Shown here: piece by piece, positions 690-63,249 of the stretch
How the letters are laid out: each line of letters begins with the position of its first letter
Numbering within the stretch: the first letter of the stretch is position 1
Origin: Schmidtea nova
Taxonomy: Eukaryota
Length of the DNA stretch: 64,000 nucleotides
Direction of reading: 5' to 3'
Assembly (NCBI GenBank): GCA_044892505.1
Contig: CM097882.1
Span: forward strand, 142,972,001-143,036,000
Made by a program: the position numbers and the translations under genes
The notes under the pieces: model-generated
What the model was told of the DNA's origin: nothing
Seen by the model: the letters and a program-made list of their open reading frames with translations, nothing else
Database searches by the model: none

Positions 690-760
690 ATGAAAAACTA
701 TTGTTTATATACTAAATTCAAAATTTTTTAAATTCAAAAATTTTTAACCAATCAAATTTG
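690..760 (-). promoter_or_regulatory. TATA + CCAAT promoter module homologous to the PolB promoter
   Basis: ATGAAAAACTATTGTTTATATACTAAA vs ATGAAAAAGTATTGTTTATATATCAAA (22621); AACCAATCA at 746-754. Confidence 0.55.
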
Positions 761-1179: not shown

Positions 1180-1500
1180 ACAAAACCCGTGTGTAAAACG
1201 ATAACTTTTAAATTTCTAATCAAACAATTTAGTGAAAAATTTATACATATAGTAAAAACTCTAAAATATTTATTTAAATTGTTCAAAAATATCAATAAAA
1301 CATGTGTGCAACAAGAAAAATGACTAATTTTATATTTTAATTTAAGCCATTTTATAGGAAATTAAATTCTACATGTACACTGTTAATGTGAAAACCAATT
1401 AATAACAACAAAACACGTGTGCGGCGCGCAAAACACAACATTTTGAATTTTGATTTTGGCCATCTTGTAGAGAATAAAATTCTGTCTATACATTGTTACA
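1180..1500. repeat. About 3 degenerate ~114-bp units with AAAAC(A/C)(C/T)GTGTG core, related to the 144-bp array
   Basis: Cores near 1183, 1297 and 1410; shared AAGCCATTTTATAGGAAATTAAATT motif. Confidence 0.6.
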
Positions 1501-2097
1501 GCGAGAAAAACGAATAATTTCAATTTGAGGCACAAATAAAGAAAAAAGAAAAAACGGGAGAGTAGGTGATAGTGAGGACTTGGGGCCAAGCCATTTATCC
1601 CTAAACTGAATATATTACGTAATAATTATACAGTTTACCCACCCCACCCCCACCACTCCCTCAAAGGAACGTATAACTTTATGTCATTACGTAATTATTA
1701 TGCATTTATTAGACAATCATTACATGGCCATTACGTAATTATTACGCAATAGTAACGCAATTGTTATGTTACTTTATATAAAATTTAAAATTCTTACATT
1801 ATACAATAATTCTTATGCAATTGATAATGTAATACTGTAATTTATTTATTTTTATTTACTTTTTCATAAATTTTACAAAAAATATAAAATATATTAATAT
1901 TTTCAATTTTTTTTCCAAAACTTTCAAAAATGCTCAGATTTCAATCATTTTTATACCAATCTACTGAGAATTCAATGGTAAAAAATAAACAAAACAAGTT
2001 TAAAATAAAACTTTATTCAATAAAATTGATCATCGGCTTCATCAACACGCGCGGGGGCGCGCGGCGGGGGTAAACTGTTATAATTTACGGCTAATTT

Positions 2098-2418
2098 AAG
2101 GCTAAGGGTATAACATTGAAGTAAACTAAACTGAATCATCAGTCGTCTCTGGATTGTTATAATAATAATTAAATAGTTTCTGTTGATCAGTCGAGAATTG
2201 TTAGTAACAATCATCAATTATTTACTAATAAATATTCGAAAATTGCCTTGACTAATCTTGATGACAAAAGACTTTGGGTGGATAAAAATGAAAGTATTGC
2301 ATATGGACATTATAAGGGATGTGGCTCGTTTATAGACCAATCAAAAGATCAGGTTAGCGATCCAGTTTCAGATCCAGCTCTCAATTCAAATTATATATCC
2401 AATTCAGATTTGTATTGA
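2098..2418 (+). pseudogene. C-terminal fragment of a divergent protein-primed PolB (not in the ORF track)
   Basis: Manual translation KAKGITLK*TKLNHQ...NHQLFTNKYSKIALTNLDDKRLWVDKNESIAYGHYK aligns to KAKGATLKDTKIDHD...NHQLYSFKNSKIALTNNDDKRVWVGKNESCAYGHYK of 18364-22098; two in-frame stops; AATAAA overlaps the end of the stop. Confidence 0.9.
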
Positions 2419-2929
2419 ATAAAACTTTGTTAAGAAATAATTGGTTTCATTGTATTTAGTTTTATATTTATTTAGACTGTTATGTTTAATTGTTTTTAAA
2501 AATTTTATGTGTTGTCCAGATTTGAATCGGTTTTATCGTTCAGGGTTTTCATTTTTTTATGATATGTTTCAATCTTTTTATTTAATGTAAAAATAATTAT
2601 TTCTGTTTACAAATATTAATAAATTCATCTGTTCTTGTAGTTGCAGTCTGTTGAATTGACTTTTAAATTTAGACTGTTCTCGCATAAATTCCATCTGTTT
2701 TCATAGTTAGCACATTCGATTTTCTAAATTCTATTTTTACCAAAATTATATAATATATCCAAATTTATCAGTTAAAAACAATTACTCGAAATGTTAGTCA
2801 GTCGATTAAGTCATTCGATTAATGTCGATTAATATCATTCGAATAAGTAAAAACATGTTATCATGTGTGTTTCGGGTAATAATTAATGTGTTGTGTATTT
2901 TGACATTACCAACAGTAGTCACGGAAGTT

Positions 2930-3200
2930 GCACAATGTGTGTGTGTGTTTACCTTAGCAATAGATACTTCAGGAATTATATATTGACACGTGTCTTAACC
3001 TTAGAAAAAGGCTACAAGTCGACTACACTTTAATGTGTGTTTACCCTAGGAACTTCTTTCCCGGAGATTATATATTAATGTGTGTTTGTTTACCTTAGCA
3101 ACATCTTTCCTGGAGACTTTATATTAATGTGCGTGTTTACCCTAGCAACATTTTCCCCAAGATTATATATTGATGTGTGTGTTTATAGCAACCGTTGCTA
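2930..3200. repeat. Subterminal degenerate ~45-55-bp tandem repeats (GTGTGTTTACC(T/C)TAGCAA)
   Basis: About 5 copies between the PolB remnant and the 3239 terminus, the same position as the 71-bp repeats of the main element. Confidence 0.65.
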
Positions 3201-3316
3201 TATGAAAAAAGTGGTACCGAGTCCTCACTATCCCCTACTATATATATGAAAAAAAACATTTGTCGGATGACTTATTTGTTTTAAACAAGAAAAGCTATAT
3301 CTGGTAACTATACCTG

Positions 3317-16429: not shown

Positions 16430-17463
16430 TATATGAAATTTCTAAATTAAATTATATATATTTTCAATAATACATGTATTTTATCTAAAGAAATTAATCA
16501 ATGATAATCATCTTCAAACTGTATCAAAATTTTGATAGAGTTTGACGATGATTATCATTAATTAATTTGCTTACATATGTATTTAGTTGTCTGATTTATT
16601 CTCATTGTTCTCTTGCAATCTTCGTGTTATTTACTATATAAATTTACAGCTGAGTTCGTGTAAATTCATGTTTATTTTTAATATATGTTTTATTTTTATT
16701 ATATACCTATTGTAAGATAATTTTAAGAGATTTATTAGGCGATTATGTAAGATTTTAATTATAAACTTCTTGTGCACGATCAGATTTTGAGGTAATCTCT
16801 TCATTTAAACAAATTAAATTTTTGATTTCACCTGCTGGGTTTATGGGTGTGTTTTAAATAATTAATAATAAATAATTAAACAAATAATAATAAATAAGTA
16901 TACTAGGGATGCCTCACCCATAACCATACATAAAAACAAATCGTCTCACTCGCGCGCCCCTAAGTATTCCCTATCTAGTTAGGTTGGAACTGCGTGCGGC
17001 GGTTGAAAAATGATGGGCAGGTGAGCTCCATCGCTGGAACTACTCCCCATTTATTTTCACGGGCCCCTGCTGCCTGCTAGGAGGTCTTACACTGGTATTC
17101 TATCGTCATCTACGCTTAACTTCAAACAAAAATCGTATTTCAACTAAAAATTTAAGTCAGCTACAATTCCTGAATTTCGAAAAACGAAATAAAGTGATAC
17201 ATCGTAAAAATTCATTTATTTATAAAAATTCTCGGAAATCTAATTTATTAAGTATAACTGTTAAAAAACCCAAAATCACCACTATGTCGTTGCATCGCTA
17301 TGTGCAAAAAATTCTTGATCGAATTCGTCTTGCGATAATTTTAATTCTGAACTTAAATCACCAGGTGAAATGTAAAATTCGTGTAAGTAGTGAGATAATG
17401 GCCCTTTGGCGCACTTAAATTCTACCCACCCCCCCCCCCACCCCCCTAGAAAATTTTTTTCTC

Positions 17464-17820
17464 TGCGTTGACGGGCCACTATGTTTTTTCTGGCAATTTT
17501 TGTATTGGAAATTTATTGTCGGTCTTTTGTACAGGTGCGTTGACGGGCCACTATGTTTTTCTGGTCATTATTGTATTGGAAATTTATTGTCGGTCTTTTG
17601 TACAGGTGCGTTAGCGGGCCATTATGTTTTTGGGTCAATCTTTGTATTGGAAAATTTTCGTCGGTCTTTTGTACAGGTGCGTTAGCGGGCCATTATGTTT
17701 TTGGGTCAATCTTTGTATTGGAAAATTTTCGTCGGTCTTTTGTACAGGTGCGTTAGCGGGCCATTATGTTTTTGGATCGATCTTTTTTATTGGAAAATTT
17801 TTGTCGGTCTTTTGTACAGG
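17464..17820. repeat. 71-bp subterminal tandem repeat, 5 units (left arm)
   Basis: Unit starts at 17464, 17536, 17607, 17678, 17749. Confidence 0.95.
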
Positions 17821-18363
17821 GATTTTGGGCTCCGAGATTTTTCTCAGGCAAAAAGGGACTGGTATTTTGTACATGGAATTTTGGTCGAGGTTTTTGTAAA
17901 GCATTTTCTACTCCCAGATCCTATCTAGGACAAAAAGAGACTCTAGTAATTATTATACAGAAATTTTCAAGAGATTTTTATGGTAAATAAAAACACGTGT
18001 AAATTTATCAAAATGTTAAATAGATTTAAATGGTTTTTATTTCTATGGTAAAATACAAAGACAAAAGAATGACATAATATTTAAAATTTAAGAAAAAAAA
18101 GGGTAAAATCAAGGCAATGTGAGAGTTGAAATGACACAATATTTAAAATTTAATAAATAAAAAGGGTAAAATCAATTTTTTGGAGAAATCAGAGTTGGTA
18201 AATTTTTAAATATAAAATTAAATTCTTTTTCACAAAATGAAATTAATTTTTCACAAAATTCTTTTTTAAACCAATAAAAGTCTTAACTAATAAAAAGAAA
18301 AATTTTTAACTAATAAAAAGAAACATTTTTAACTAAATTTTATTAAAATAAATACAAATTTTA

Positions 18364-21300
18364 TTAAAATAAATCTTCTTCATCGTCTTCTTCTGTAACT
18401 TGATTGAATTCTCTGTCATTAGTGTCTTTATAATGCCCGTATGCACAACTTTCATTTTTTCCCACCCAAACCCTTTTATCATCATTATTAGTTAGTGCAA
18501 TTTTTGAATTTTTAAAGCTATATAACTGATGATTTTTTGTACCTATTCTAAATTGTGGTACACTAATCTCTGAGTTATTTAAATAACATTTTACATATGA
18601 ATCGTGGTCTATTTTAGTATCCTTTAATGTTGCTCCCTTAGCCTTTGTAGTATTAGTTTTACCCAACAAGCTGTAACATTTTGGTCTAAGGAAAATCCAC
18701 TCATCATATCCTTCACCCTTACTTTCATCTTTGAATTTTCCAATAACAGAATCCAATTTCTTGCTGTATAGTGGGTGATCAGTTGGATAATTTGATGTAT
18801 CTAACAAGTTATCATTTTTCATTTCATTTAATAATATTTCTAATTTTAGATTTTTAATTTCTAGAAAAAACGAATCTGTATCGCCTGCTACGATATTTAT
18901 CTGACAACTATATTTGTCGCGATATTTTTGTAAATCTTTGTATTGTAATTCGTACATTCGAAGTTTTGATAAATCAAGCACCGATTGTCCAATATAACTC
19001 GGTCTATCTAAACAAATCGAATCTGGATTTAATAAAGCAGCAACTAAATTATCGTCGATTTTAATAGATTTTTTGAAAGAAGGTTTTGATGTATATTTAA
19101 CTAGTTTTTTCTCCGTTGAACATAATCTTAAATTCATTCTCCTTTTAAGATTTTCCACTGTTTTGCCATACAGACTATTATTGAGTAATTTGAAAAAGTT
19201 TTTATCTAAAGTATTAGTACTTTTCGCCCGCAATTCAGTGTTGGTGTCTATATACTTTTTGAAAATTGGAGATTGTTTAAATTTAACTGCTCTATTTATC
19301 TTTGTGACTTTAACACCAAGTCCTAAATATAATTGAAGTAATCGCCAATGAATTATATAATTATTTTTAGGGTAATGAGTCAATAGTAATTTTTCTACTT
19401 TTGAACCTCGTGGTTTCATTTTTTCTGCAGCTACCGGGAAATCATCCAAGAAATCATGAATTTCAGCAGGTATTTCCAAATCTACCTCTAAAGTGTAACC
19501 GTAAGATATAGATTCAAGATTTAGATTAATACAGTCATGCAAAATATTATCTAAATTATCAGTCACCCAACTAAATTCTCCACAAGGTAAAGGTTCACTT
19601 AAAGCCCATCCGTAAAGATTATTTATATCGATATACAATAATTCTGTATTTTCATCTGTTTTAACGAAGTGTTTATTTACAAAAGTCAAACCTCCTCGAA
19701 TTCCCCCTTCATAAAAGCTAAACATTTCATTTTCTGTTATTAATTCTATTGGTTCATCTAAAGTCATTAAAGAAGATGACCAAGACATGCCAGGAATACC
19801 GAAGTAATTCAATGGCTCTAATCTATTGTGAGCTATAGATTTGGTTCGAAATTGCTGAAAGAAATCAGCCAAAAGAAAGCAATCAAGTTTCAAGTAAGTC
19901 ATCATATAATCTAAAAGAGTAACACAGTTTGTTTCTGTCCAAATCAGTTGTGCCTTTTCATATTCTTCTTTTGAAACACCTTTCCAGATTGGTGGTAACT
20001 CATAAGTATTTTCAAGTACTTCTAAACTTGTAGCAAAGCTATACGGAAAAATCCCCTTTTCAGAAACTATAGTTCCATTAAAAACCGAATTTGTCAAAGG
20101 TAAAGATTTCAACGTTTTCACTGCCTTTGCCAAAGAATCATTCACAAACTGGTATGAGTCTAAAAATCTTAAACTAATCTTGCCAACATGAGCTATCAAT
20201 GAAATAAATTTTTCAGTTGTAATAGGTATACAACCCAATGACCAATTCTTGAACTTATTTAATCCGTGTTTAAGAATATGGTGCATATCATATCCTTTCA
20301 AGTTATGAAAAACTATTGGTAAAGACTTGTTGATTTTTCTATTAATGTTACACGTTTGACATGCTGCACCTAAATATTTCCCAGTGAAATGATCATGGTC
20401 TCTTACAGGATCTACGATATTTTTCATGCAAAGGTAACAAGTAGTACCATTTTTAAATTGATCCTCTTCAATTTCAGTCAATCTATTCATTGGTTTGTTT
20501 CCATTTTTATTGTAATATGGAAGAACTTTTAATAAAGCAATATTTTCAATCGCTTTTAAAAATTCATCTACACAATTTAGTCCAATAAATTGTTGGTAAG
20601 ATTTTGTCCCATCAAAGTTATTTATTAACAAAAGCCCCGCAGAAATAGGCAAGTGTTTCTGATAATATACATCATCCTTTGGTAAAATAGCTTCAAAGTC
20701 TGCATAAATAACAAATGGTGGGGTAACAGTTTTTGACCAATCTGAAAATTTAAGCATTTTATTTTCCGGGAAAGTGTATAATGTTGTTCCTAGTTGATTT
20801 TTTCTGCATAAAATCTCATGTTTTTCCAACGATATTTTATTTGGGAAACCATTTAAACATCTACTGCACCATTCGCTTCTTATCCTAGTAGTACAATAAA
20901 TGCTTTGGTGACAATTCATTAAACGTTTTAAATTTATAATAGGTACATAATGATATTTTTCCCCTTCATTTAATAACAATAAATTTATAGTTTTTCCTTC
21001 TATTACTTTTGACCGATGAATAATATCCAAATGAGGATGCTTTAAAATATAATCATCTTGCTCTTCATTAATTTCATTATTATAACATAGTACATTTATG
21101 ATCAATCCTGGATTCTTTGCTTCGAATTTTCTGATACTATTTAATTTCATGGGCATGTCTGATATATCATATTTGAGCTCTGACAAAAAATTTATATATT
21201 TTGATACTCTTTCTCTATCTCTAGATTTTAAATCATATTTTAATATAGCTAAAATGCTATATAAAAAACATAAATTATCCTTATTATCAATGTTTAATAT

Positions 21301-22585
21301 ACATCTCTTTCCTTTTAATCCTTGAGGAGTTTTTACAATGCTTCTACCTGCTAACCTACTTATATTGGATATCTTAGTTACAACAAAACTTATTTCAGTA
21401 ATACGATTAAGTACCCAACTGCTACCTAATTCCGAAAATGAAGTTATCTTTTCATTCAATTTTTTAATTCCCTCTTCGAAAAATTTCTGTGTCAGAGGTT
21501 TTGCACTATTGGAAATATTGTTTCTTTTAATTTCTCCATCTTTCTCAAATTCAACACAGATACCAAATTGTATCTTCACATAGCCTATTTCATTAATTAT
21601 TTCTATTAATTTATTAATTAATGATTGTGGAAAAATAATTTGCTTTATATTTAAATCACTAGTGTTAATTTTTAAAATCCTATGCGATCCATTTAAATCA
21701 CTTTCAATGACAGGGAGAGGTTCTATAACACTTCCTCCAGTTTGATAAAATCCAACGTTCCAAAAATCTTCAATCTCTTCCACCGTTTCAATTAAAATCT
21801 TGTTTTTGTCCGTTTCGTCCGCTTCCATCGCTTCTAATAAAATCTTATCTTCAATCTCTTCTTGTAAATTTTGTGATTTCTTGATTATTTCTATGTTCAA
21901 TTTAATATTTTTATTATTTATAGGGTTTTGAGTCAAGTTTGGTCTTTTAAATAATTTTATTTTCTTAGACCTATATTCATTTAAATGATCCTTATGTTCA
22001 TCGTAAAAATTTTTATATGTAAGGGGTTGGGAAGTTTGGCATACGGGACATATATAATAGCGAATTTTATAATAAGAGTGTCCATAATATTGCTCCATTG
22101 ATCGATGACAATTATCGTTGTGGTCAGTTGAAAAGCAATAATTTGGGTATAAAGCACCTATGAATGTAAATTAATGTTAAAAATAATAATAATATTATCA
22201 AATTATATATTTACAAATATTTTACTATATTTATTTACTAAATTAATTAAAATATAATTAAATTAATTAAAATTAATCAATACTTACATTGGTCATTCAA
22301 TACCACATCAGGTATAACTCCATTATTCATATTATTTTCGTCACTAATAATCTTAGTTTGTACGGTAGTTAGTTCAGTCATATTTACATCACCTAAAGTA
22401 AAAATTAAATAATATATTATGTTTAAGATTAAGTACCATTTTCTTCTGTATTTTCTAACAACGATTTCCCAATTGAATTATTGATATTACCTAAATTACT
22501 ACTAAATGATAATAAATTAAAAAATAAATTTACCGTTTTCTTTCCCACTTGGGTTTTCGTTCATAAAACTTGTTATTGTGTTCAT
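18364..22585 (-). CDS. polB: Intact protein-primed family B DNA polymerase, spliced, ~1334 aa; exons 22585-22534, 22490-22437, 22392-22288, 22157-18364
   Basis: ExoI VIYADFE, ExoII FHNLKGYD, ExoIII YLKLD; Pol motifs YIDINNLYG, KLLNNSLYGK, AGDTDS; C2H2-like CSRC..H..C; HNH/EndoVII-like CYLC..DHDH..CQTCN; three GT-AG phase-1 introns add 90 in-frame codons to the 1244-aa ORF. Confidence 0.92.
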
Positions 22586-22634
22586 TTTTAATGTTTATTA
22601 TTTGTAAAAGTGAATAATGAATGAAAAAGTATTG

Positions 22635-22734
22635 TTTATATATCAAAGTTATTACACACACATAACCTTTGACCAATAAAAATCGAGTAAGGGGTAGGAA
22701 ATTTATTCTTATCAACCAATCAGAATCGAGTAAG
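22635..22734 (-). promoter_or_regulatory. PolB promoter, left arm: two CCAAT boxes plus TATA
   Basis: GACCAATAAAAATCGAGTAAG and AACCAATCAGAATCGAGTAAG; TTTATATATC (TATA on the minus strand) ~50 bp upstream of the ATG; conserved at 63710-63810. Confidence 0.7.
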
Positions 22735-23139
22735 AGGCAGTAAAGGTATTATTATCATCAGATAGAGAATTATGACTAATTATATATTACGTTGCAGTAT
22801 TTTAAAAAAACTAGAAAAGTTATTTCAACAAATTATAATACACATCAAAGTTATAAAATATTTCAATGAATTGCATGCATGTCATATGATTAAAATATAT
22901 TAGACTAAATATTTCAGTAAATTACGTCTAAATTATATTACATTTCAATAATTACGTCAGTTATAAAAAATATTTTAATTAATTTTGATAAAATACATTA
23001 GAATTGTCAATAACACACACAAAACCTTTATAATTTTCATTAGTATATGATAGAAAATTAAATTATATCTACACATGATTACAATAAATATTCGATAAAT
23101 CTATGCTAAATAGTCGAAAAAATCCCAGTATTTTATTAC

Positions 23140-24240
23140 AAAACACGTGTGCATCACAAACATATCAATATACTTAATTTTGAATCAAGCCATTTTATAG
23201 ATATTTAAATTTTATCTATATGTAATTACAATGAAAACTCACTAAAGTTATTTTAAATAACTAAAACTTACAAAATTAATTACAAAACACGTGTGTAACA
23301 CGAAAAACGACAACTTTTAGATTTTGAATCAAGCCATTTTATAGGAAATTAAATTTTACATATACTTTATTACAATGAAAAGTCAATAAATTTATTTTAT
23401 ATACATGAAAAATGCAAAATTAATTACAAAACACGTGTGTAACACCAAAAACGACAACTTTTAGATTTTGAATCAAGCCATTTTATAGCAATTTAAATTT
23501 TATCTATACTTTATTACAATGAAAAGTCAATAAATTTATTTTATATACACGAAAAATGCAAAATTAATTACAAAACACGTGTGTATTACAAACACACTAG
23601 CAAACTAATTTTCTAATCAAGCCATTTTATAGGAAATTAAATTGTACTTATACTTTATTACAATGAAAACTCAATAAATTTATTTTATATACACGAAAAA
23701 TGCAAAATTAATTACAAAACACGTGTGTATTACAAAATACAACAACTTTCAGATTTCTAATAAAGCAATTTTGTAGACATTTAAATTTTACACATATAAT
23801 ATTACAAGGAAAACTCAATAAATTTATTTTATATACACGAAAAATATAAAATTAATTACAAAACACGTGTGCATTACAAACACACCAACAAACTAAATTT
23901 CTAATCAAGCCATTTTATAGGAAATTAAATTTTACTTATACTTTATTACAATGAAAAATACATAAAGTTACTTTATATTGTTAAAAATTTGAAAATTCAA
24001 AATAAAACACGTGTGCATCACAAAATACGACAACTTTCAGAATTCTAATAAAGCTATTTTGTAGACAATTAAATTTTATCTATACAATATTACAATGAAA
24101 ACTCAAAAAAGTTATTTTATTTAGGTGAAATATACAAATTTAATGACAAAACACGTGTGCACAACAATATACACAACATTTTGAATTTTTAATTCAGCCA
24201 TTTTGTAGACAATAAAATTCTGTCTATCTATTGTTACACT
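23140..24240. repeat. 144-bp tandem array, 8 units, each with an E-box (AAAACACGTGTG), left arm
   Basis: CACGTG at 23144, 23288, 23432, 23576, 23720, 23864, 24008, 24152 (exact 144-bp period). Confidence 0.95.
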
Positions 24241-24297
24241 TAAAACCTGATCAGGCCCAAATAAAGTGTCAAAGAACCCGTCAGAAAAAAACAGGAT

Positions 24298-25087
24298 AGT
24301 AGATAGTTATGAGAAGCATGACTCATCAAAATTACGTCATAATTACGTAACATTTCGTGAACCCCCCTCTCCCCCGTTTTTTTTTTGATGGCGTAATCGA
24401 TGACGTAATTTCAAATTCAAATTTTAAATTTAAATTTCCAAAGGTCAAATAAGGTCAAACCTTCAAACAATGGTATCATTCGAAAGGTCTTGAAGAGGTC
24501 TATCCAATGGTCATACCCTCGAAGGTCTATGGAGGGTCCTTAACCTTCAAGGGGTCAAAAACCTTTAACCTTTTACAATACTTACAAGTTATATATCAAA
24601 CAAAAGGTAATTGAGAGGTAAGTATGATGGTCATACTTTCAAAGGTGTATGGAGTGTCCTGAACCTTGAAAGGGTCAAAAACCTTCAACTTTTTTTAATT
24701 CTTATAATATGTACATCAAACAAAAGGTTTTTGAGAAGTGAGTATGGTAGTCATACCCTTGAAGGTACATGGAGGGTGCTCAACCTTTAAAGGGTCTAAT
24801 ATATATAATATGGGTATCAAACAAAAGCTAATTGAGATGTGCACACAATGGTCGTACCCTTGAAAAGTGCAAGATTCAAAAATTTTAAACCCTAGTAATA
24901 TACATATCATTCGAAAGGTATTTGAGAGATGTAAATGGTAGTTATACGCTCAAAGGTCTATAGTCAAAGGTTCCAAGGTAAAATTTTCAAAAAAAAAAAA
25001 TGTAAAGAATTTACATGGGGGGGGTCACGAAATATTATGTAATTATGACGTAATTTCGATGAGTTATGCTTCTCATAACTATCTACT
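24298..25087. mobile_element. 790-bp central core with its own AGTAG...CTACT termini and 70-bp imperfect inverted repeat
   Basis: AGTAGATAGTTATGAGAAGCAT at 24298; reverse complement ends at 25087; 5 mismatches in 70 bp; flanks are inverted (CAGGAT/ATCCTG), so no TSD. Confidence 0.75.
24474..24960. repeat. About 5 degenerate 90-120-bp direct repeats in the palindrome loop
   Basis: Units begin ATCA(TTCG/AACA)AAAGGT...TTGAGA...GGTCATACCCTTGAAGGT near 24475, 24595, 24715, 24816, 24906. Confidence 0.8.
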
Positions 25088-25144
25088 ATCCTGTTTTTTT
25101 CTGACGGGTTCTTTGACACTTTATTCGGGCCTGATCAGGTTTTA

Positions 25145-26245
25145 AGTGTAACAATAGATAGACAGAATTTTATTGTCTACAAAATGGCTGAATTAAAAAT
25201 TCAAAATGTTGTGTATATTGTTGTGCACACGTGTTTTGTCATTAAATTTGTATATTTCACCTAAATAAAATAACTTTTTTGAGTTTTCATTGTAATATTG
25301 TATAGATAAAATTTAATTGTCTACAAAATAGCTTTATTAGAATTCTGAAAGTTGTCGTATTTTGTGATGCACACGTGTTTTATTTTGAATTTTCAAATTT
25401 TTAACAATATAAAGTAACTTTATGTATTTTTCATTGTAATAAAGTATAAGTAAAATTTAATTTCCTATAAAATGGCTTGATTAGAAATTTAGTTTGTTGG
25501 TGTGTTTGTAATGCACACGTGTTTTGTAATTAATTTTATATTTTTCGTGTATATAAAATAAATTTATTGAGTTTTCCTTGTAATATTATATGTGTAAAAT
25601 TTAAATGTCTACAAAATTGCTTTATTAGAAATCTGAAAGTTGTTGTATTTTGTAATACACACGTGTTTTGTAATTAATTTTGCATTTTTCGTGTATATAA
25701 AATAAATTTATTGAGTTTTCATTGTAATAAAGTATAAGTACAATTTAATTTCCTATAAAATGGCTTGATTAGAAAATTAGTTTGCTAGTGTGTTTGTAAT
25801 ACACACGTGTTTTGTAATTAATTTTGCATTTTTCGTGTATATAAAATAAATTTATTGACTTTTCATTGTAATAAAGTATAGATAAAATTTAAATTGCTAT
25901 AAAATGGCTTGATTCAAAATCTAAAAGTTGTCGTTTTTGGTGTTACACACGTGTTTTGTAATTAATTTTGCATTTTTCATGTATATAAAATAAATTTATT
26001 GACTTTTCATTGTAATAAAGTATATGTAAAATTTAATTTCCTATAAAATGGCTTGATTCAAAATCTAAAAGTTGTCGTTTTTCGTGTTACACACGTGTTT
26101 TGTAATTAATTTTGTAAGTTTTAGTTATTTAAAATAACTTTAGTGAGTTTTCATTGTAATTACATATAGATAAAATTTAAATATCTATAAAATGGCTTGA
26201 TTCAAAATTAAGTATATTGATATGTTTGTGATGCACACGTGTTTT
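25145..26245. repeat. 144-bp E-box array, 8 units, right arm (inverted)
   Basis: Reverse complement of 23140-24240. Confidence 0.95.
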
Positions 26246-26650
26246 GTAATAAAATACTGGGATTTTTTCGACTATTTAGCATAGATTTATCGAATATTTA
26301 TTGTAATCATGTGTAGATATAATTTAATTTTCTATCATATACTAATGAAAATTATAAAGGTTTTGTGTGTGTTATTGACAATTCTAATGTATTTTATCAA
26401 AATTAATTAAAATATTTTTTATAACTGACGTAATTATTGAAATGTAATATAATTTAGACGTAATTTACTGAAATATTTAGTCTAATATATTTTAATCATA
26501 TGACATGCATGCAATTCATTGAAATATTTTATAACTTTGATGTGTATTATAATTTGTTGAAATAACTTTTCTAGTTTTTTTAAAATACTGCAACGTAATA
26601 TATAATTAGTCATAATTCTCTATCTGATGATAATAATACCTTTACTGCCT

Positions 26651-26750
26651 CTTACTCGATTCTGATTGGTTGATAAGAATAAATTTCCTACCCCTTACTC
26701 GATTTTTATTGGTCAAAGGTTATGTGTGTGTAATAACTTTGATATATAAA
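26651..26750 (+). promoter_or_regulatory. PolB promoter, right arm: two inverted CCAAT boxes plus TATATAAA
   Basis: GATTGG near 26664, TATTGG near 26707, GATATATAAA at 26741-26750, ATG at 26800. Confidence 0.7.
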
Positions 26751-26799
26751 CAATACTTTTTCATTCATTATTCACTTTTACAAATAATAAACATTAAAA

Positions 26800-29700
26800 A
26801 TGAACACAATAACAAGTTTTATGAACGAAAACCCAAGTGGGAAAGAAAACGGTAAATTTATTTTTTAATTTATTATCATTTAGTAGTAATTTAGGTAATA
26901 TCAATAATTCAATTGGGAAATCGTTGTTAGAAAATACAGAAGAAAATGGTACTTAATCTTAAACATAATATATTATTTAATTTTTACTTTAGGTGATGTA
27001 AATATGACTGAACTAACTACCGTACAAACTAAGATTATTAGTGACGAAAATAATATGAATAATGGAGTTATACCTGATGTGGTATTGAATGACCAATGTA
27101 AGTATTGATTAATTTTAATTAATTTAATTATATTTTAATTAATTTAGTAAATAAATATAGTAAAATATTTGTAAATATATAATTTGATAATATTATTATT
27201 ATTTTTAACATTAATTTACATTCATAGGTGCTTTATACCCAAATTATTGCTTTTCAACTGACCACAACGATAATTGTCATCGATCAATGGAGCAATATTA
27301 TGGACACTCTTATTATAAAATTCGCTATTATATATGTCCCGTATGCCAAACTTCCCAACCCCTTAAATATAAAAATTTTTACGATGAACATAAGGATCAT
27401 TTAAATGAATATAGGTCTAAGAAAATAAAATTATTTAAAAGACCAAACTTGACTCAAAACCCTATAAATAATAAAAAGATTAAATTGAACATAGAAATAA
27501 TCAAGAAATCACAAAATTTACAAGAAGAGATTGAAGATAAGATTTTATTAGAAGCGATGGAAGCGGACGAAACGGACAAAAACAAGATTTTACTTGAAAC
27601 GGTGGAAGAGATTGAAGATTTTTGGAACGTTGGATTTTATCAAACTGGAGGAAGTGTTATAGAACCTCTCCCTGTCATTGAAAGTGATTTAAATGGATCG
27701 CATAGGATTTTAAAAATTAACACTAGTGATTTAAATATAAAGCAAATTATTTTTCCACAATCATTAATTAATAAATTAATAGAAATAATTAATGAAATAG
27801 GCTATGTGAAGATACAATTTGGTATCTGTGTTGAATTTGAGAAAGATGGAGAAATTAAAAGAAACAATATTTCCAATAGTGCAAAACCTCTGACACAGAA
27901 ATTTTTCGAAGAGGGAATTAAAAAATTGAATGAAAAGATAACTTCATTTTCGGAATTAGGTAGCAGTTGGGTACTTAATCGTATTACTGAAATAAGTTTT
28001 GTTGTAACTAAGATATCCAATATAAGTAGGTTAGCAGGTAGAAGCATTGTAAAAACTCCTCAAGGATTAAAAGGAAAGAGATGTATATTAAACATTGATA
28101 ATAAGGATAATTTATGTTTTTTATATAGCATTTTAGCTATATTAAAATATGATTTAAAATCTAGAGATAGAGAAAGAGTATCAAAATATATAAATTTTTT
28201 GTCAGAGCTCAAATATGATATATCAGACATGCCCATGAAATTAAATAGTATCAGAAAATTCGAAGCAAAGAATCCAGGATTGATCATAAATGTACTATGT
28301 TATAATAATGAAATTAATGAAGAGCAAGATGATTATATTTTAAAGCATCCTCATTTGGATATTATTCATCGGTCAAAAGTAATAGAAGGAAAAACTATAA
28401 ATTTATTGTTATTAAATGAAGGGGAAAAATATCATTATGTACCTATTATAAATTTAAAACGTTTAATGAATTGTCACCAAAGCATTTATTGTACTACTAG
28501 GATAAGAAGCGAATGGTGCAGTAGATGTTTAAATGGTTTCCCAAATAAAATATCGTTGGAAAAACATGAGATTTTATGCAGAAAAAATCAACTAGGAACA
28601 ACATTATACACTTTCCCGGAAAATAAAATGCTTAAATTTTCAGATTGGTCAAAAACTGTTACCCCACCATTTGTTATTTATGCAGACTTTGAAGCTATTT
28701 TACCAAAGGATGATGTATATTATCAGAAACACTTGCCTATTTCTGCGGGGCTTTTGTTAATAAATAACTTTGATGGGACAAAATCTTACCAACAATTTAT
28801 TGGACTAAATTGTGTAGATGAATTTTTAAAAGCGATTGAAGATATTGCTTTATTAAAAGTTCTTCCATATTACAATAAAAATGGAAACAAACCAATGAAT
28901 AGATTGACTGAAATTGAAGAGGATCAATTTAAAAATGGTACTACTTGTTACCTTTGCATGAAAAATATCGTAGATCCTGTAAGAGACCATGATCATTTCA
29001 CTGGGAAATATTTAGGTGCAGCATGTCAAACGTGTAACATTAATAGAAAAATCAACAAGTCTTTACCAATAGTTTTTCATAACTTGAAAGGATATGATAT
29101 GCACCATATTCTTAAACACGGATTAAATAAGTTCAAGAATTGGTCATTGGGTTGTATACCTATTACAACTGAAAAATTTATTTCATTGATAGCTCATGTT
29201 GGCAAGATTAGTTTAAGATTTTTAGACTCATACCAGTTTGTGAATGATTCTTTGGCAAAGGCAGTGAAAACGTTGAAATCTTTACCTTTGACAAATTCGG
29301 TTTTTAATGGAACTATAGTTTCTGAAAAGGGGATTTTTCCGTATAGCTTTGCTACAAGTTTAGAAGTACTTGAAAATACTTATGAGTTACCACCAATCTG
29401 GAAAGGTGTTTCAAAAGAAGAATATGAAAAGGCACAACTGATTTGGACAGAAACAAACTGTGTTACTCTTTTAGATTATATGATGACTTACTTGAAACTT
29501 GATTGCTTTCTTTTGGCTGATTTCTTTCAGCAATTTCGAACCAAATCTATAGCTCACAATAGATTAGAGCCATTGAATTACTTCGGTATTCCTGGCATGT
29601 CTTGGTCATCTTCTTTAATGACTTTAGATGAACCAATAGAATTAATAACATAAAATGAAATGTTTAGCTTTTATGAAGGGGGAATTCGAGGAGGTTTGAC

Positions 29701-31021
29701 TTTTGTAAATAAACACTTCGTTAAAACAGATGAAAATACAGAATTATTGTATATCGATATAAATAATCTTTACGGATGGGCTTTAAGTGAACCTTTACCT
29801 TGTGGAGAATTTAGTTGGGTGACTGATAATTTAGATAATATTTTGCATGACTGTATTAATCTAAATCTTGAATCTATATCTTACGGTTACACTTTAGAGG
29901 TAGATTTGGAAATACCTGCTGAAATTCATGATTTCTTGGATGATTTCCCGGTAGCTGCAGAAAAAATGAAACCACGAGGTTCAAAAGTAGAAAAATTACT
30001 ATTGACTCATTACCCTAAAAATAATTATATAATTCATTGGCGATTACTTCAATTATATTTAGGACTTGGTGTTAAAGTCACAAAGATAAATAGAGCAGTT
30101 AAATTTAAACAATCTCCAATTTTCAAAAAGTATATAGACACCAACACTGAATTGCGGGCGAAAAGTACTAATACTTTAGATAAAAACTTTTTCAAATTAC
30201 TCAATAATAGTCTGTATGGCAAAACAGTGGAAAATCTTAAAAGGAGAATGAATTTAAGATTATGTTCAACGGAGAAAAAACTAGTTAAATATACATCAAA
30301 ACCTTCTTTCAAAAAATCTATTAAAATCGACGATAATTTAGTTGCTGCTTTATTAAATCCAGATTCGATTTGTTTAGATAGACCGAGTTATATTGGACAA
30401 TCGGTGCTTGATTTATCAAAACTTCGAATGTACGAATTACAATACAAAGATTTACAAAAATATCGCGACAAATATAGTTGTCAGATAAATATCGTAGCAG
30501 GCGATACAGATTCGTTTTTTCTAGAAATTAAAAATCTAAAATTAGAAATATTATTAAATGAAATGAAAAATGATAACTTGTTAGATACATCAAATTATCC
30601 AACTGATCACCCACTATACAGCAAGAAATTGGATTCTGTTATTGGAAAATTCAAAGATGAAAGTAAGGGTGAAGGATATGATGAGTGGATTTTCCTTAGA
30701 CCAAAATGTTACAGCTTGTTGGGTAAAACTAATACTACAAAGGCTAAGGGAGCAACATTAAAGGATACTAAAATAGACCACGATTCATATGTAAAATGTT
30801 ATTTAAATAACTCAGAGATTAGTGTACCACAATTTAGAATAGGTACAAAAAATCATCAGTTATATAGCTTTAAAAATTCAAAAATTGCACTAACTAATAA
30901 TGATGATAAAAGGGTTTGGGTGGGAAAAAATGAAAGTTGTGCATACGGGCATTATAAAGACACTAATGACAGAGAATTCAATCAAGTTACAGAAGAAGAC
31001 GATGAAGAAGATTTATTTTAA
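26800..31021 (+). pseudogene. polB: Right-arm pPolB with one premature stop; exons 26800-26851, 26895-26948, 26993-27097, 27228-31021
   Basis: GAA>TAA at 29651-29653 splits the ORF into 788 + 453 aa; otherwise differs from the left copy by 4 missense changes. Confidence 0.92.
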
Positions 31022-31564
31022 TAAAATTTGTATTTATTTTAATAAAATTTAGTTAAAAATGTTTCTTTTTATTAGTTAAAAATTTTTCTTTTTATTAGTT
31101 AAGACTTTTATTGGTTTAAAAAAGAATTTTGTGAAAAATTAATTTCATTTTGTGAAAAAGAATTTAATTTTATATTTAAAAATTTACCAACTCTGATTTC
31201 TCCAAAAAATTGATTTTACCCTTTTTATTTATTAAATTTTAAATATTGTGTCATTTCAACTCTCACATTGCCTTGATTTTACCCTTTTTTTTCTTAAATT
31301 TTAAATATTATGTCATTCTTTTGTCTTTGTATTTTACCATAGAAATAAAAACCATTTAAATCTATTTAACATTTTGATAAATTTACACGTGTTTTTATTT
31401 ACCATAAAAATCTCTTGAAAATTTCTGTATAATAATTACTAGAGTCTCTTTTTGTCCTAGATAGGATCTGGGAGTAGAAAATGCTTTACAAAAACCTCGA
31501 CCAAAATTCCATGTACAAAATACCAGTCCCTTTTTGCCTGAGAAAAATCTCGGAGCCCAAAATC

Positions 31565-31850
31565 CCTGTACAAAAGACCGACAAAAATTTTCCAATAAAA
31601 AAGATCGATCCAAAAACATAATGGCCCGCTAACGCACCTGTACAAAAGACCGACGAAAATTTTCCAATACAAAGATTGACCCAAAAACATAATGGCCCGC
31701 TAACGCACCTGTACAAAAGACCGACGAAAATTTTCCAATACAAAGATTGACCCAAAAACATAATGGCCCGCTAACGCACCTGTACAAAAGACCGACAATA
31801 AATTTCCAATACAATAATTGCCAGAAAAAACATAGTGGCCCGTCAACGCA
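31565..31850. repeat. 71-bp subterminal tandem repeat, 4 units (right arm)
   Basis: Reverse complement of the left array with one unit fewer. Confidence 0.95.
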
Positions 31851-33012
31851 GAGAAAAAAATTTTCTAGGGGGGTGGGGGGGGTGGGTAGAATTTAAGTGC
31901 GCCAAAGGGCCATTATCTCACTACTCGTGTAAACTTCAAAATTATCGTTAAAAAATGTGCACACCCCAAAACCTATCGCTATGTAAAACTCACAATCATT
32001 GCTATGTAATAAAAATTGTGCAACACTCAAAATACTATCACTATATGCAACAATCAAAAAACTATCGCTATTAAAAATATGTTACCAAATACTATTCACT
32101 ATGTGCAACGATCAAAATGTTTTATCAAAACTATTCACTATGTGTAACGATCAAAATGTTTAACAAAACTATTCATAATGTGAAACCTCTATTAAAACCA
32201 TTTTACATATAAGAATCTTATCTCACTCAACATTTCGTGGAGCTAAAGAGTCCCAGAAAGACGACTTGCGCCCTCGCAGCGTGAGCTACTGAGGAAGCAT
32301 ATTTATATTTATAAATGACAATTTTATATAATAAACATCATAGAATATCTATTAAATCAAATCAAATCATAGTAACCATTACAAACAAAATCCACAAAAT
32401 TTACATGATCAAAGCTGGCTGGTGAAATCTTTACCGGAATCTGTGCAAATTTTTAATTTCAAAAAAAATGTTCTCCGCGAGTTGAAATTATGAATTTCTA
32501 ATGCCTTTATATACTATTTTTGATATCGGTGTGTCCATTACTGATGCGGGGTTTCTATACAACTGTTAGCAAAGCTGTTGGTGTATGTGGCCGCTTTTCT
32601 GTCGGTTTTCTCTCATCTTACCGACCCCCAACACCAGTCGCTCGGACATTACGTGTGATATCGCATGTTGACTCTGTCGAGACTGCATGCACGTAATATC
32701 CATTTATTTTTATTTTTCTATTTTTACAACATTTTTTAACATTACTAATTAGTTTTCAACGGCCATTTAACCAAATCAAAACACGCTACCACAAATCGGG
32801 TAGTCACTTATTGTTATTGATCCGGTGATTAAATAAAATCATTTCAAATTACTGTTGCGTTGCAAATTACGACAACGCGATTTCGCAACTACACAAATAA
32901 AATTCAATCTCATTTATTTTAAAAATTAAAATTACAATTAAAAGAATAAAAACAAGGTTTTCCTATAACATACGAACCTGTATATTTATTTGTATATTAA
33001 ATTACTAATTAA

Positions 33013-46100: not shown

Positions 46101-47459
46101 GCTTGAGATAAGCTTGTTTTTACTTTTTCAAACTGTTTGGTTGTTTGCTTGGTCCAGTTAATTTTAATGTTTCTTCTTGTTTTGATCAGGTCGTTTAATG
46201 GCGCTAACAATTCACTGCAGTTAATGATGTACGCATGGTAAAAGTTTACCATTCCCAAAAATCGTCTTAACTCTCTGTTTGTGTTTGGTAGTTTGAACTC
46301 TTGTATCGTGCTTATTTTCTTGTCTATTGGCTTCGTGCCTTTTTCGTCCAGTGTGTGTCCCAGAAAATTTATTTTTTTTTCAAGAATTCGCATTTTTGAA
46401 TGTTTATTTTGAGATTTGCTGAGTCCAGCGTTTCAAACACCTTTTCAATGTCTTTTAAATGAATTGTTTTGCTTGGACTTGCTATGAGGATGTCGTCCAA
46501 ATAAGCTATAGTATTCTGGTTATTTTTCAGAGTCTTGTCCATAAATCGTTGAAATGTTGCAGCTGCGTTTCGCAAACCAAATGGCATTCTGTTGTATTCG
46601 AACATGCCGATTGGTGTTACGATTGCTGTTTTTTTAATGTCTTCGTTCCTGATGGGTATTTGGTGGTAAGCCTTCTGTAAATCTATTTTCGGGAAAAGTC
46701 TTGCACCTTTAAGTCTGTTTATTATGTCTCTGATGATAGGCAGTGGGTAGTTGTCAGTAGGGGATAGTGAGGACACGGGGCCAAGCCATTTATCCTTAAA
46801 CTGTATATATTAATTAATAATTATACAGTTCCCCCCTAAAATTTTTTTATTTTGTTTACATGAAGTGAATTTTTTAATTTTTTAATTTTGTTTAAATGAA
46901 GTCATTTTATTTATTTTTATTTATTAATTTTATTATATTTATTAATCTTAATTAATTTTAATTTAATTTACTTTTAATTTATTTTTAATTTATTTTTATT
47001 TAATTTATTTTTTGTAGAGGACTTTTGATCTGGTTATTTTGTATAGGAATTTTACTCTGGTTTTTTTGTATAGGATTTTCTATTCCGAGAATTTTCTTGT
47101 GCAAAAAGGGACTCTGGGTTTTTTGTACAGGAATTTTTTATACATCGATTTTTGGTCTCGTATTTTGAATAGAATTTTTGGTCTGATATTTTTGCACAGG
47201 AATTTTCTATTCCGAGATTTTTTTTTCGGGCAAAAAGGGACTCTGGTAATTTTGAATATGATTTTTGATCTCGTATTTCTGTATAGGATTTTTAATCTAG
47301 TATTTTTGTATAGGATTTTTAGTCTGGTTATTTTGAATAGGAATTTCTACTCCCAGATTTTTCTCGGGCAAAAAGAGACTCTGATAATTTTAATATGATT
47401 TTTGATCTTAATTTTTGTATAGGATATTTAGTCTGGTATTTTCGAAAACAATATTTTGG

Positions 47460-47995
47460 TCGGGGAAATTCCAAAAAATCAAAAATGCTCAGAATCAAAT
47501 AATTTTTATACCAATCTACTGAGAATCGGGTGGCGAATAAAAAGGGTTAAAAAGTAAAAACCTGAAAATTTGACTTATCCGACCCAATTTTTATACGTAA
47601 AAAGGGTCAACTCGGAGAAAATCAAAAAATTAAAAAGAGGTCAGAATTCAATAATTTTTTATACCAATCTACTGAGAATTGAAAGGCAAACAATAATGGT
47701 CAAAAATTAAAAAACATGAAAAATTGATCTTATCCGACCAATTTTTACACGTAAAAGGGTCGACTCGGGGAAATTCCAAAAATCAAAAATGCTCAGAATT
47801 CAAAATTTTTTTATATCAATCTACTGAGATTCGAATGGCGAACAAAAAAGGGTCAAAAATAAAAACATGAAAATTTTGACTTATCCGACCAATTTTACAT
47901 GTAAAAATGATCGACTCGGGGAAATTCCAAAAATAAAAAATGCTCAGAATCAAATAATTTTTATACCAATCTACTGAGAATCGAATGGCACATAA
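47460..47995. repeat. About 150-bp tandem repeats (~4) in the left TIR; ~3 inverted copies at 49940-50410
   Basis: ATGCTCAGAATCAAATAATTTTTATACCAATCTACTGAGAAT...GACTTATCCGACC units; one copy also at 1928-1975. Confidence 0.85.

Positions 47996-63188: not shown

Positions 63189-63249
<61 letters not shown>

What the first reader, a model, noticed from the sequence alone, without database searches (positions are those of the whole stretch)
17386..31925. Giant palindromic Polinton-like element whose TIRs are the whole 7-kb arm and which encodes only PolB
Seen: AGTAGT...ACTACT ends, an exact 6-bp TSD (CGTGTA), two inverted arms (17386-24367 and 25018-31925) each holding one pPolB gene, and a 650-bp unique loop. 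Established: AG-initiated short terminal repeats, 6-bp TSDs and pPolB define Polintons/Mavericks, which normally have sub-kb to ~1-kb TIRs and separate integrase, ATPase, protease and capsid genes. Inference: this is a head-to-head dimer integrated as one unit, i.e. a hairpin-dimer replicon form I do not recognise as described for Polintons.
Basis: partly seen in the sequence, partly recalled or inferred. Interest (0 to 1): 0.96.

Follow-up and report, generated by a model that had tools for sequence, protein, structure and literature searches.

The report
Palindromic polymerase-only Maverick transposon derivative
A 14.5-kb mobile element is a mirror-image double copy of the DNA-polymerase end of a virus-like Maverick/Polinton transposon. 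It was inserted into the chromosome as one piece, and it looks like a preserved fold-back product of the way these elements copy themselves.

Summary
Window 17386-31925 is bounded by AGTAG... termini and an exact 6-bp duplication (CGTGTA). It has two inverted arms of about 7 kb and a 650-bp centre. Each arm holds one protein-primed family-B polymerase gene and no other gene. The left gene is intact and the right one has one stop.

The polymerase is of the adintovirus/Maverick type: its fold matches phi29 polymerase, and relatives at 54-64% identity sit in ordinary 16-19 kb Mavericks with integrase, ATPase and protease.

New findings:
- The centre is not just a loop. It is bounded by a second, inner pair of AGTAG terminus-like sequences that are only 93% alike, while the rest of the arms is 99.9% alike. 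The inner repeat is therefore older than the arms.
- The window holds three relatives: a decayed copy of the arm (57172 to the window end), a divergent remnant with the same array-to-inner-terminus junction and pieces of both arms (374-3239), and a 4.4-kb non-coding long-TIR relative with its own 6-bp duplication (46756-51187).

Best reading: this is a non-autonomous Maverick derivative. It arose by fold-back (copy-back) synthesis at the inner inverted repeat and was integrated as a unit by an integrase supplied in trans. It is a new variant of a known kind, and an assembly artefact is unlikely.

The parts
17380..17385 (.). left target-site duplication CGTGTA
17386..31925 (.). whole palindromic element (14,540 bp)
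17386..17463 (+). outer terminus T1 (AGTAGTGAG..., then a C-rich tract)
   Evidence: 0 mismatches to its partner
17464..17820 (.). subterminal 71-bp tandem array, 5 copies
18364..22098 (-). left polymerase gene, 1244 aa, open. It has an adintovirus-type N-terminal module, a 3'-5' exonuclease with an endonuclease-VII-like zinc insert, and a polymerase; all family-invariant residues are present
22099..23049 (.). non-coding region upstream of the left polymerase gene
   Evidence: shared with copy 3
23050..24219 (.). 144-bp tandem array, 8 units, each with an invariant AACACGTGTG
24298..24367 (+). inner terminus-like sequence T2 (AGTAGATAG..., then a C-rich tract)
24368..25017 (.). 650-bp centre with 120-bp tandem repeats
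25018..25087 (-). inner terminus-like sequence T2', 93% complementary to T2
25166..26335 (.). 144-bp tandem array of the right arm
27287..31021 (+). right polymerase gene, same length as the left one, broken by one in-frame stop and carrying 4 further amino-acid differences
31565..31850 (.). subterminal 71-bp tandem array, 4 copies
31851..31925 (-). outer terminus T1'
31926..31931 (.). right target-site duplication CGTGTA
57172..64000 (+). copy 3: a separate, older insertion of the same arm (terminus AGTAGGTAG, one 71-bp unit, polymerase gene, upstream region). It runs off the window end before the place where a centre would lie
57930..61649 (-). polymerase gene of copy 3, 96% nucleotide identity to the main copy, broken by 4 frameshifts and 6 stops
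374..3239 (.). divergent remnant with the same layout. Its left-arm inner part is colinear with 22227-24297. It has an inner terminus at 1561, a polymerase C-terminal remnant at 2095-2373 on the + strand, and a right terminus ending at 3239. Most of its right arm is deleted
46756..51187 (.). 4.4-kb non-coding relative with AGTAGGGG termini, long inverted arms and the 6-bp TSD GTTGTC (46750-46755 and 51188-51193). It is inserted in the reverse-transcriptase gene of an LTR retrotransposon

Best explanation
The element is a non-autonomous, polymerase-only derivative of an adintovirus-type Maverick/Polinton. Its body is an inverted duplication of the polymerase end of the parent element. The two halves are joined through an older short inverted repeat, the inner terminus pair T2/T2' with the 650-bp centre between them. 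Proposed mechanism, as inference: a strand running from the outer terminus T1 to T2' becomes single-stranded, during strand-displacement copying or after a break. T2' folds back on T2, the 3' end primes on its own strand, and synthesis runs back out to T1. The result is a linear palindrome with two identical T1 ends. Both ends are substrates for a Maverick integrase supplied in trans, which inserted the whole palindrome in one event and made the 6-bp duplication. Shown by sequence: the element type, the single-unit integration, the older inner repeat, and the existence of related copies. Inferred: that the fold-back happened on a free replicating molecule, that it recurs in this lineage, and that the integrase comes from an autonomous relative.
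For: Polymerase type: the 441-1244 model (pLDDT 91) matches phi29 DNA polymerase best, E 9e-20, about nine orders of magnitude ahead of other family-B polymerases. The N-terminal model matches adintovirus and MELD-virus PolB proteins, E down to 5.5e-20. 15 of 30 relatives hit PF03175 and 27 of 30 hit PF02945. Relatives at 54-64% identity lie in ordinary Mavericks with rve integrase, an A32-like ATPase, a C48 protease and Bcl-2-like and TBP-like genes. Unit integration: there is a direct 6-bp TSD, the palindrome stops exactly at the termini, and the flanks are not inverted and share one 39-bp repeat family. Fold-back at an older repeat: mismatches are 5 in 70 nt in T2/T2' against 6 in 6,838 nt in the rest of the arms, Fisher p = 4e-8. 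The flanks of T2/T2' are mirror images (CAGGAT / ATCCTG) with no direct duplication, as expected if synthesis was primed from T2'. The centre folds as single-stranded DNA into a long stem, z = -15.7. T2-type termini are working termini: the 4.4-kb relative at 46756-51187 carries them and has its own 6-bp TSD. Lineage trait: the remnant at 374-3239 keeps the same array-spacer-inner-terminus junction and has a right-arm polymerase remnant and terminus. Copy 3 is an independent insertion of the same arm. Precedent: the protein-primed phi29 polymerase makes mostly inverted chimeras when displaced 3' ends prime on the same molecule (PMC1855051). Divergent, widely spaced inverted repeats in single-stranded DNA cause fold-back inverted dimers (PMC10164571).
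Against: No free linear or hairpin molecule is observed, only the integrated product. The remnant at the window start lacks most of its right arm, and its left arm is cut by the window edge, so its palindromic nature is inferred from orientation and not seen directly. Copy 3 leaves the window before its centre. No integrase, capsid, ATPase or protease gene of a Maverick lies in the window, so the helper is assumed. None of 102 loci of relatives from public metagenomes and viral contigs (33 of them 10 kb or longer) has an inverted second copy of its own polymerase, although such assemblies rarely hold long palindromes. Arm-to-arm gene conversion in the chromosome could also keep the arms alike.
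Confidence: 0.58

Rival explanations
1. Origin inside the chromosome. A conventional full-length Maverick with T1 termini integrated and made the TSD. Later a break or stalled fork inside it folded back at T2/T2' and copied the polymerase end outwards. The new strand then recombined with the original right TIR, replacing all other genes.
For: The product would look the same. The outer ends differ by one 71-bp unit and 3 bp in a C-run, which is compatible with a junction in the terminal repeats. Fold-back inverted duplications at chromosomal breaks are well documented (PMC10622511; PMC10164571).
Against: No trace of any other Maverick gene remains. There are no substitutions in the outer 904 aligned nt of the arms, so nothing marks an older right TIR. 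The divergent remnant at 374-3239 has the same junction and both arm types, so at least one palindromic relative must have moved or formed again.
Confidence: 0.2
2. The parent lineage has very long TIRs that already include the polymerase gene, and this copy is an internal deletion of such an element.
For: Long TIRs occur in this lineage: the 4.4-kb relative has inverted arms of about 0.9-1.2 kb, and one metagenomic relative has a 1.18-kb inverted repeat (L098).
Against: No relative with two inverted copies of its own polymerase was found among 102 loci. The close relatives show one polymerase gene next to unique genes. The step in divergence at T2 is not expected from a simple deletion.
Confidence: 0.1
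3. Two independent insertions head to head, or one copy nested in another.
For: The region is rich in nested transposons.
Against: There is only one TSD pair, at the outer ends. The inner ends have mirror-image flanks and no direct duplication. Two separate copies would not be 99.9% alike over 6.8 kb, including two fast-evolving tandem arrays, with matching boundaries.
Confidence: 0.03
4. Assembly or library artefact, such as a fold-back chimeric long read, a missed adapter or an amplification chimera.
For: Near-identical inverted arms are what such artefacts produce (PMC1855051). The window contains gaps or masked runs elsewhere.
Against: The palindrome ends exactly at transposon termini with a direct TSD, and continues into different, non-inverted flanks of one repeat family. 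The arms differ by 11 substitutions clustered in a meaningful way, by a whole repeat unit and by a stop in one gene copy. A divergent relative shows the same junction. There is no N inside the element.
Confidence: 0.04

Closest known systems
Polinton/Maverick elements of the adintovirus 'Alpha' PolB class (PMC8502044)
   Same: Polymerase with the adintovirus-type N-terminal module plus a pfam03175-type protein-primed polymerase, AG-initiated termini and a 6-bp TSD. The closest relatives sit in complete elements with integrase, ATPase, protease and Bcl-2-like and TBP-like genes.
   Different: No integrase, capsid, ATPase or protease gene. The inverted repeats are 7 kb, against for example 744 bp in C. 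elegans Polintons. The polymerase gene is present twice. An inner pair of termini is present.
Partial Polinton copies with pPolB and a TIR but no integrase, as in C. elegans (bioRxiv 10.1101/2024.01.15.575659)
   Same: The polymerase end of the element persists without the integrase.
   Different: Those are described as remnants at rearranged loci, not as symmetrical elements with two functional-looking ends and a TSD.
Inverted (copy-back) products of strand-displacing protein-primed polymerases, and fold-back inverted duplications at short inverted repeats (PMC1855051, PMC10164571, PMC10622511)
   Same: One side of a molecule is duplicated in inverted order, with the junction at a pre-existing short or divergent inverted repeat and a spacer kept as a unique centre.
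   Different: Those are test-tube chimeras or chromosome rearrangements. Here the product is a mobile element with transposon termini and a TSD, and related copies exist. From my own knowledge, unchecked here: symmetrical one-end molecules are also described among incomplete adenovirus particles.
Teratorn of medaka, which has internal TIRs at the boundary between long inverted repeats and the unique region (PMC6431247)
   Same: A second, inner pair of transposon termini lies exactly where the long inverted arms meet the unique centre.
   Different: Teratorn is a piggyBac-herpesvirus fusion of 41-182 kb with a different transposase and different termini; this is an analogy of layout only.
Bidnaviridae and 'bidnaparvo' viruses (PMC8502044, PMC4061559)
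   Same: A Polinton-derived polymerase of the same class on a linear genome of about 6-7 kb with inverted termini. The N-terminal model also matches polymerases labelled as densovirus or parvovirus in BFVD.
   Different: Those encode capsid and other proteins and are free viruses. Here there is no capsid gene, and the element is integrated with a TSD.

Membership tests
Polinton/Maverick (autonomous element) | protein-primed family-B DNA polymerase | tested here: met
   Fold best matches phi29 polymerase, E 9e-20. 57% identical over full length, 64% over residues 440-1244, to P0001, which hits PF03175. All family-invariant residues are present. The window's own protein does not reach PF03175 in this Pfam copy.
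Polinton/Maverick (autonomous element) | retrovirus-like (rve) integrase gene | tested here: not met
   No ORF and no tblastn match in the element. The only rve matches in the window belong to an LTR retrotransposon near 45000.
Polinton/Maverick (autonomous element) | capsid proteins, packaging ATPase, maturation protease | tested here: not met
   tblastn with the neighbouring proteins of four related Mavericks finds nothing in the window.
Polinton/Maverick (autonomous element) | terminal inverted repeats starting 5'-AG and a 6-bp target-site duplication | tested here: met
   AGTAG at all nine termini examined. TSDs are CGTGTA for the main element and GTTGTC for the 4.4-kb relative.
Non-autonomous Polinton derivative | shares termini and TSD length with an autonomous partner in the same genome that supplies the integrase | not testable with these tools
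   The genome is not in the collections, and no autonomous copy lies in the window.
Copy-back / fold-back inverted dimer | inverted duplication of one end of the parent, both outer ends identical | tested here: met
Copy-back / fold-back inverted dimer | junction at a pre-existing short inverted repeat that is older than the arms, with the spacer kept as the centre | tested here: met
   T2/T2' 93% against the rest of the arms 99.9%, p = 4e-8. Flanks are mirror images with no direct duplication.
Copy-back / fold-back inverted dimer | formed on a replicating free molecule rather than in the chromosome | not testable with these tools
   Only the integrated product is available.
Foldback-type transposons | long TIRs built of tandem repeats with little or no coding sequence | tested here: not met
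   The arms hold tandem arrays but are mostly a unique polymerase gene. Termini and TSD are of Polinton type.
Bidnavirus-like genome | capsid gene together with the polymerase on a linear genome with inverted termini | tested here: not met
   There is no second gene in the arm.

The most novel reading that the evidence does not exclude
In this Maverick lineage the heritable unit is a monomer whose polymerase-distal end is a terminal hairpin (T2-centre-T2'). Copying around that hairpin, in a rolling-hairpin-like step added to protein-primed replication, would regularly yield palindromic dimers. The arms would then be made anew at each cycle, while the mismatches between T2 and T2' are passed on, and the integrase would insert these dimers. 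That would explain why the arms are 99.9% alike but T2/T2' only 93%, and why a divergent subfamily shows the same layout.
Probability: 0.2. Interest if true: 0.85.

Novelty: new variant of a known kind. Interest (0 to 1): 0.6.

Why it matters
How Mavericks/Polintons copy themselves is still a model: protein-primed, strand-displacing synthesis on a free linear molecule, followed by integration. A palindromic, polymerase-only copy was inserted as one unit, and its junction sits on an older short inverted repeat. This is the kind of by-product such replication is expected to leave, so these copies are sequence-level evidence bearing on that model. A genome-wide census could test it without any experiment on the element.

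It also shows that the integrase accepts a 14.5-kb perfect palindrome. Non-autonomous derivatives can keep the polymerase while losing everything else. Such elements place 7-kb inverted repeats in chromosomes. These are known sources of instability, and if transcribed through, of hairpin RNA against the polymerase of active relatives; that last point is inference.

Tried and rejected
- Exact look-ups of the polymerase and five other window ORFs found nothing, so the host genome and other genomic copies could not be reached and the host was not identified. The relatives' Bcl-2-like and TBP-like genes and the adintovirus matches point to an animal, probably an invertebrate.
- The search for related loci with the single protein found no close relative in JGI metagenomes or IMG/VR.
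- With the alignment it returned 97 loci, none with an inverted second copy of its own polymerase. This is a weak test, because short-read assemblies break at palindromes.
- Sequence searches of the PDB, with the protein and with the profile, gave no polymerase hit. Only the fold comparison did.
- Pfam does not report PF03175 for the window's own protein.
- The N-terminal model gave no significant PDB match, and no OTU protease was named. The OTU likeness reported for adintovirus PolB (PMC8502044) is therefore not confirmed here; only the likeness to adintovirus PolB N-termini is.
- pN/pS between the main copy and copy 3 is 0.67, which is uninformative because copy 3 is decayed.
- Nested insertion of the centre into a finished palindrome was considered and rejected, because the flanks are mirror images without a direct duplication.
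- L002, with two head-to-head polymerase genes, was examined as a possible second case. Its two genes are only 50% identical, so it is not a copy-back palindrome.
- Literature searches found no description of a palindromic or polymerase-only Polinton. That is absence in the held library only.
- Note on the rules: the ORF list shows the pieces of the broken right-hand gene, and I read those bounds early in my own reasoning.
Full report

The element runs from 17386 (AGTAGTGAG...) to 31925 (...CTCACTACT). CGTGTA lies directly outside both ends. A given 6-mer of that composition is expected at a given place with probability about 1.5e-4.

The arms are 17386-24367 and 25018-31925, with 650 nt between them. 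A 6,812-nt ungapped core is reported as 100% complementary. Over the arms proper I count 11 substitutions and two indels, which are 3 bp in a C-run and one 71-bp repeat unit.

No N lies inside the element. Both flanks belong to one ~39-bp tandem-repeat family. The flanks are direct, not inverted, continuations of each other.

2. CONTENT OF AN ARM

From the outside inwards an arm holds:
- a 78-nt terminus T1, which includes a C-rich tract;
- a 71-bp tandem array, with five units on the left and four on the right;
- about 540 bp of unique sequence;
- the polymerase gene, transcribed towards the terminus;
- 950 bp of non-coding sequence;
- an eight-unit 144-bp array in which every unit keeps AACACGTGTG at exact spacing, although the units are only about 80% alike;
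- a 78-nt spacer;
- a 70-nt sequence I call T2.

No other ORF of 92 aa or more exists in the arm. The proteins that neighbour the polymerase in related Mavericks find nothing in the window.

The left polymerase gene (18364-22098, minus strand) is open and 1244 aa long. The right one (27287-31021) has the same length and differs at five nucleotides. All five change the protein, and one is a stop.

3. THE POLYMERASE

By eye the protein has the exonuclease and polymerase motifs of family B. It keeps every column that is invariant among 30 relatives.

Pfam reports only an endonuclease-VII-like zinc insert in the exonuclease region, at residues 549-585. Among 30 family members, 15 hit PF03175 (DNA_pol_B_2) and 27 hit PF02945.

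A model of residues 441-1244 (pLDDT 91) matches phi29 DNA polymerase best, at E 9e-20 and TM 0.67-0.69 normalised to the target. The first nine hits are all phi29 polymerase, and other family-B enzymes follow at about 1e-10.

A model of residues 1-440 (pLDDT 79) has no significant match in the PDB, and no OTU protease is named there. In BFVD its best matches are a protein of Drosophila-associated adintovirus 2 (5.5e-20), a MELD-virus PolB, an Adintovirus sp. polymerase, and polymerases labelled as densovirus. The adintovirus paper describes exactly this class, an N-terminal module plus a pfam03175 polymerase that is shared with bidnaviruses (PMC8502044).

4. RELATIVES ARE ORDINARY MAVERICKS

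More than 2,000 proteins match. The closest ones, at 54-64% identity, lie on contigs of 5-32 kb. They sit beside an rve integrase, an A32-like ATPase, a C48 protease, several unnamed genes of capsid-module size, and Bcl-2-like and TBP-like genes. These are accessory genes that the adintovirus paper lists for animal-associated elements.

The element here is therefore derived from that kind. It fails the membership test for an autonomous Polinton because integrase, capsid, ATPase and protease genes are absent.

5. THE CENTRE IS BOUNDED BY A SECOND PAIR OF TERMINI

At 24298 the left arm reads AGTAGATAG..., followed about 55 nt later by a C-rich tract. This is the same design as T1, which has AGTAG and then a C-rich tract about 45 nt later. 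The mirror copy ends at 25087.

The 790-bp unit T2-centre-T2' thus looks like a small terminal-inverted-repeat element. Its flanks, however, are mirror images (CAGGAT on the left, ATCCTG on the right) and not a direct duplication. It therefore did not insert into a finished palindrome.

Mismatches between the arms are distributed as follows:
- T1: 0 of 75
- 71-bp array: 0 of 295
- subterminal unique sequence: 0 of 534
- polymerase gene: 5 of 3,735
- upstream region: 0 of 951
- 144-bp array: 0 of 1,170
- spacer: 1 of 78
- T2: 5 of 70

T2 against all the rest gives Fisher p = 4e-8. The inner inverted repeat is therefore older than the arms. This is what is expected if a pre-existing short inverted repeat served as the fold-back point and the arms were then made by copying. 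As single-stranded DNA the centre folds into a long stem (z = -15.7).

6. RELATED COPIES IN THE SAME WINDOW

(a) Copy 3 starts at 57172 with AGTAGGTAG, in different flanking sequence. It carries one 71-bp unit, a polymerase gene 96% identical in nucleotides but broken by four frameshifts and six stops, and the same non-coding upstream region. It leaves the window at 64000, before a centre could be seen.

(b) A divergent remnant lies at 374-3239.
- Positions 374-1560 are colinear with 22227-24297 of the main left arm, including a shorter 144-bp-type array.
- The junction array-spacer-AGTAG is homologous to that of the main element.
- The inner terminus at 1561 pairs with the right terminus ending at 3239, 28 nt at 86%.
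- Between them, on the plus strand, lies a polymerase C-terminal remnant at 2095-2373, followed by subterminal repeats.
- There is no duplication around 1561/3239 (CGGGAG against ATATAT), so 1561 is internal.
- Left-arm sequence on the left and right-arm sequence on the right mean that this was also a two-armed element. It has since lost most of its right arm. The window edge hides the rest of its left arm, so this is an inference from orientation.

(c) A 4,432-bp non-coding relative lies at 46756-51187.
- Its termini are about 90% identical to the inner terminus of (b).
- It has long inverted arms.
- It has an exact 6-bp duplication, GTTGTC.
- It sits inside the reverse-transcriptase gene of an LTR retrotransposon.

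Termini of the T2 type are therefore working termini, and this lineage has been mobilised in trans.

7. MECHANISM

Shown:
- the element is Maverick-derived;
- it lacks its own integrase;
- it was integrated as one unit;
- the inner repeat is older than the arms;
- relatives with the same junction exist.

Inferred:
- A strand from T1 to T2' became single-stranded and T2' annealed to T2.
- The 3' end was then extended back to T1, giving a linear palindrome with two T1 ends.
- A helper's integrase then inserted this palindrome.

Strand-displacing protein-primed polymerases are known to do this. With phi29 polymerase, more than 85% of chimeras are inverted, formed when displaced 3' ends prime on the same molecule (PMC1855051). 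Divergent and widely spaced inverted repeats in single-stranded DNA also yield fold-back inverted dimers in yeast (PMC10164571).

The arms are far more alike than T2/T2', and a divergent subfamily shows the same layout. Both facts suggest that the fold-back recurs in the lineage rather than being inherited once. I cannot tell whether it happens on a free molecule or in the chromosome.

8. RIVALS

An origin inside the chromosome, from a full-length insertion, gives the same product and keeps a fair share of the probability. A long-TIR parent with the polymerase in the TIR is not supported by the relatives. Two separate insertions and an assembly artefact are at odds with four observations:
- the single TSD;
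- the mirror-image inner flanks;
- the patterned differences between the arms;
- the non-inverted flanks.

9. NOVELTY

The held literature gives TIRs of hundreds of bp for Polintons, for example 744 bp in C. elegans. It also mentions loci with pPolB and a TIR but no integrase. I found no description of a palindromic, polymerase-only Polinton or of inner termini in one.

The nearest analogy of layout is Teratorn, which has internal TIRs at the boundary between long inverted repeats and the unique region.

I rate this a new variant of a known kind. It is real and unusual. It is useful as indirect evidence on Maverick replication, and it can be explained with known processes.

10. LIMITS

- The host genome is not in the collections, so the census that would decide between a family trait and repeated accidents could not be made.
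- The survey of 102 loci of relatives is weak evidence, because such assemblies seldom retain long palindromes.
- The OTU assignment of the N-terminal module rests on the literature, not on my searches.

Noticed in passing
window 46756-51187: A 4.4-kb non-coding element with AGTAGGGG termini, long inverted arms and the 6-bp TSD GTTGTC, nested in the RT gene of an LTR retrotransposon. It belongs to the same terminus family as the inner terminus of the remnant at 1561.
   Followed up: yes
window 34752-35066, 34910-36393 and 53903-55365: A 315-bp near-perfect palindrome whose centre coincides with the start of a 1.5-kb block. The block is duplicated at 97% identity and carries an intronless ubiquitin-conjugating-enzyme ORF (35294-35917 and 54266-54889). 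This is another fold-back-type junction in the same region.
   Followed up: partly
window 23050-24219 and 25166-26335: Each 144-bp unit keeps AACACGTGTG (a CACGTG core) at exact spacing, giving 16 hits in the two arrays (a 17th window hit lies at 1412 in the remnant's array) against 0.03 expected window-wide, while the rest of the unit varies by about 20%. These look like conserved protein-binding sites upstream of the polymerase gene.
   Followed up: partly
window 18364-22098, residues 549-585: An endonuclease-VII-like zinc (His-Me finger type) insert lies in the exonuclease region of the polymerase and is present in 27 of 30 relatives. The profile weakly matches restriction endonuclease Hpy99I (E 0.06). 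Its role is unknown.
   Followed up: partly
L002:1-6315 (ENA ERZ25039515 contig_28610): A related Maverick contig has two head-to-head polymerase genes only 50% identical and 625 bp apart. Between them lie 33-bp repeats, a C10G10 junction and a 15-nt inverted repeat containing GTAGTG. The layout recalls the centre here, but it is not a copy-back palindrome.
   Followed up: partly
L001:12382-13431 and L002:7583-8161: Close relatives carry Bcl-2-like and TBP-like genes next to the ATPase and integrase genes, as reported for animal-associated adintoviruses.
   Followed up: no
window 13975-16832, 41769-43002 and 52282-53792: Blocks to the left of the element recur at 92-96% identity further right. 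There they are interrupted by an LTR retrotransposon that itself holds the 4.4-kb element. The second copy lacks about 3.5 kb of sequence around the insertion site, so it is not a clean empty site.
   Followed up: partly
window 61715-63226: Copy 3 has about 1.5 kb between its polymerase start and the shared upstream region that the main copy lacks. This stretch includes a 520-nt N run and an ORF of 239 aa with no Pfam match.
   Followed up: no
window 10678-11157, 38416-38877 and 44960-46776: A MULE transposase fragment and LTR-retrotransposon pol fragments show that the window is a transposon-rich, AT-rich (about 29% GC) eukaryotic region.
   Followed up: no
L101:1-6543 and L098:2260-12034: One IMG/VR contig of 6.5 kb has a polymerase and 274-bp inverted ends. 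Another has a 1.18-kb inverted repeat around its polymerase. TIR length therefore varies widely among distant relatives.
   Followed up: no
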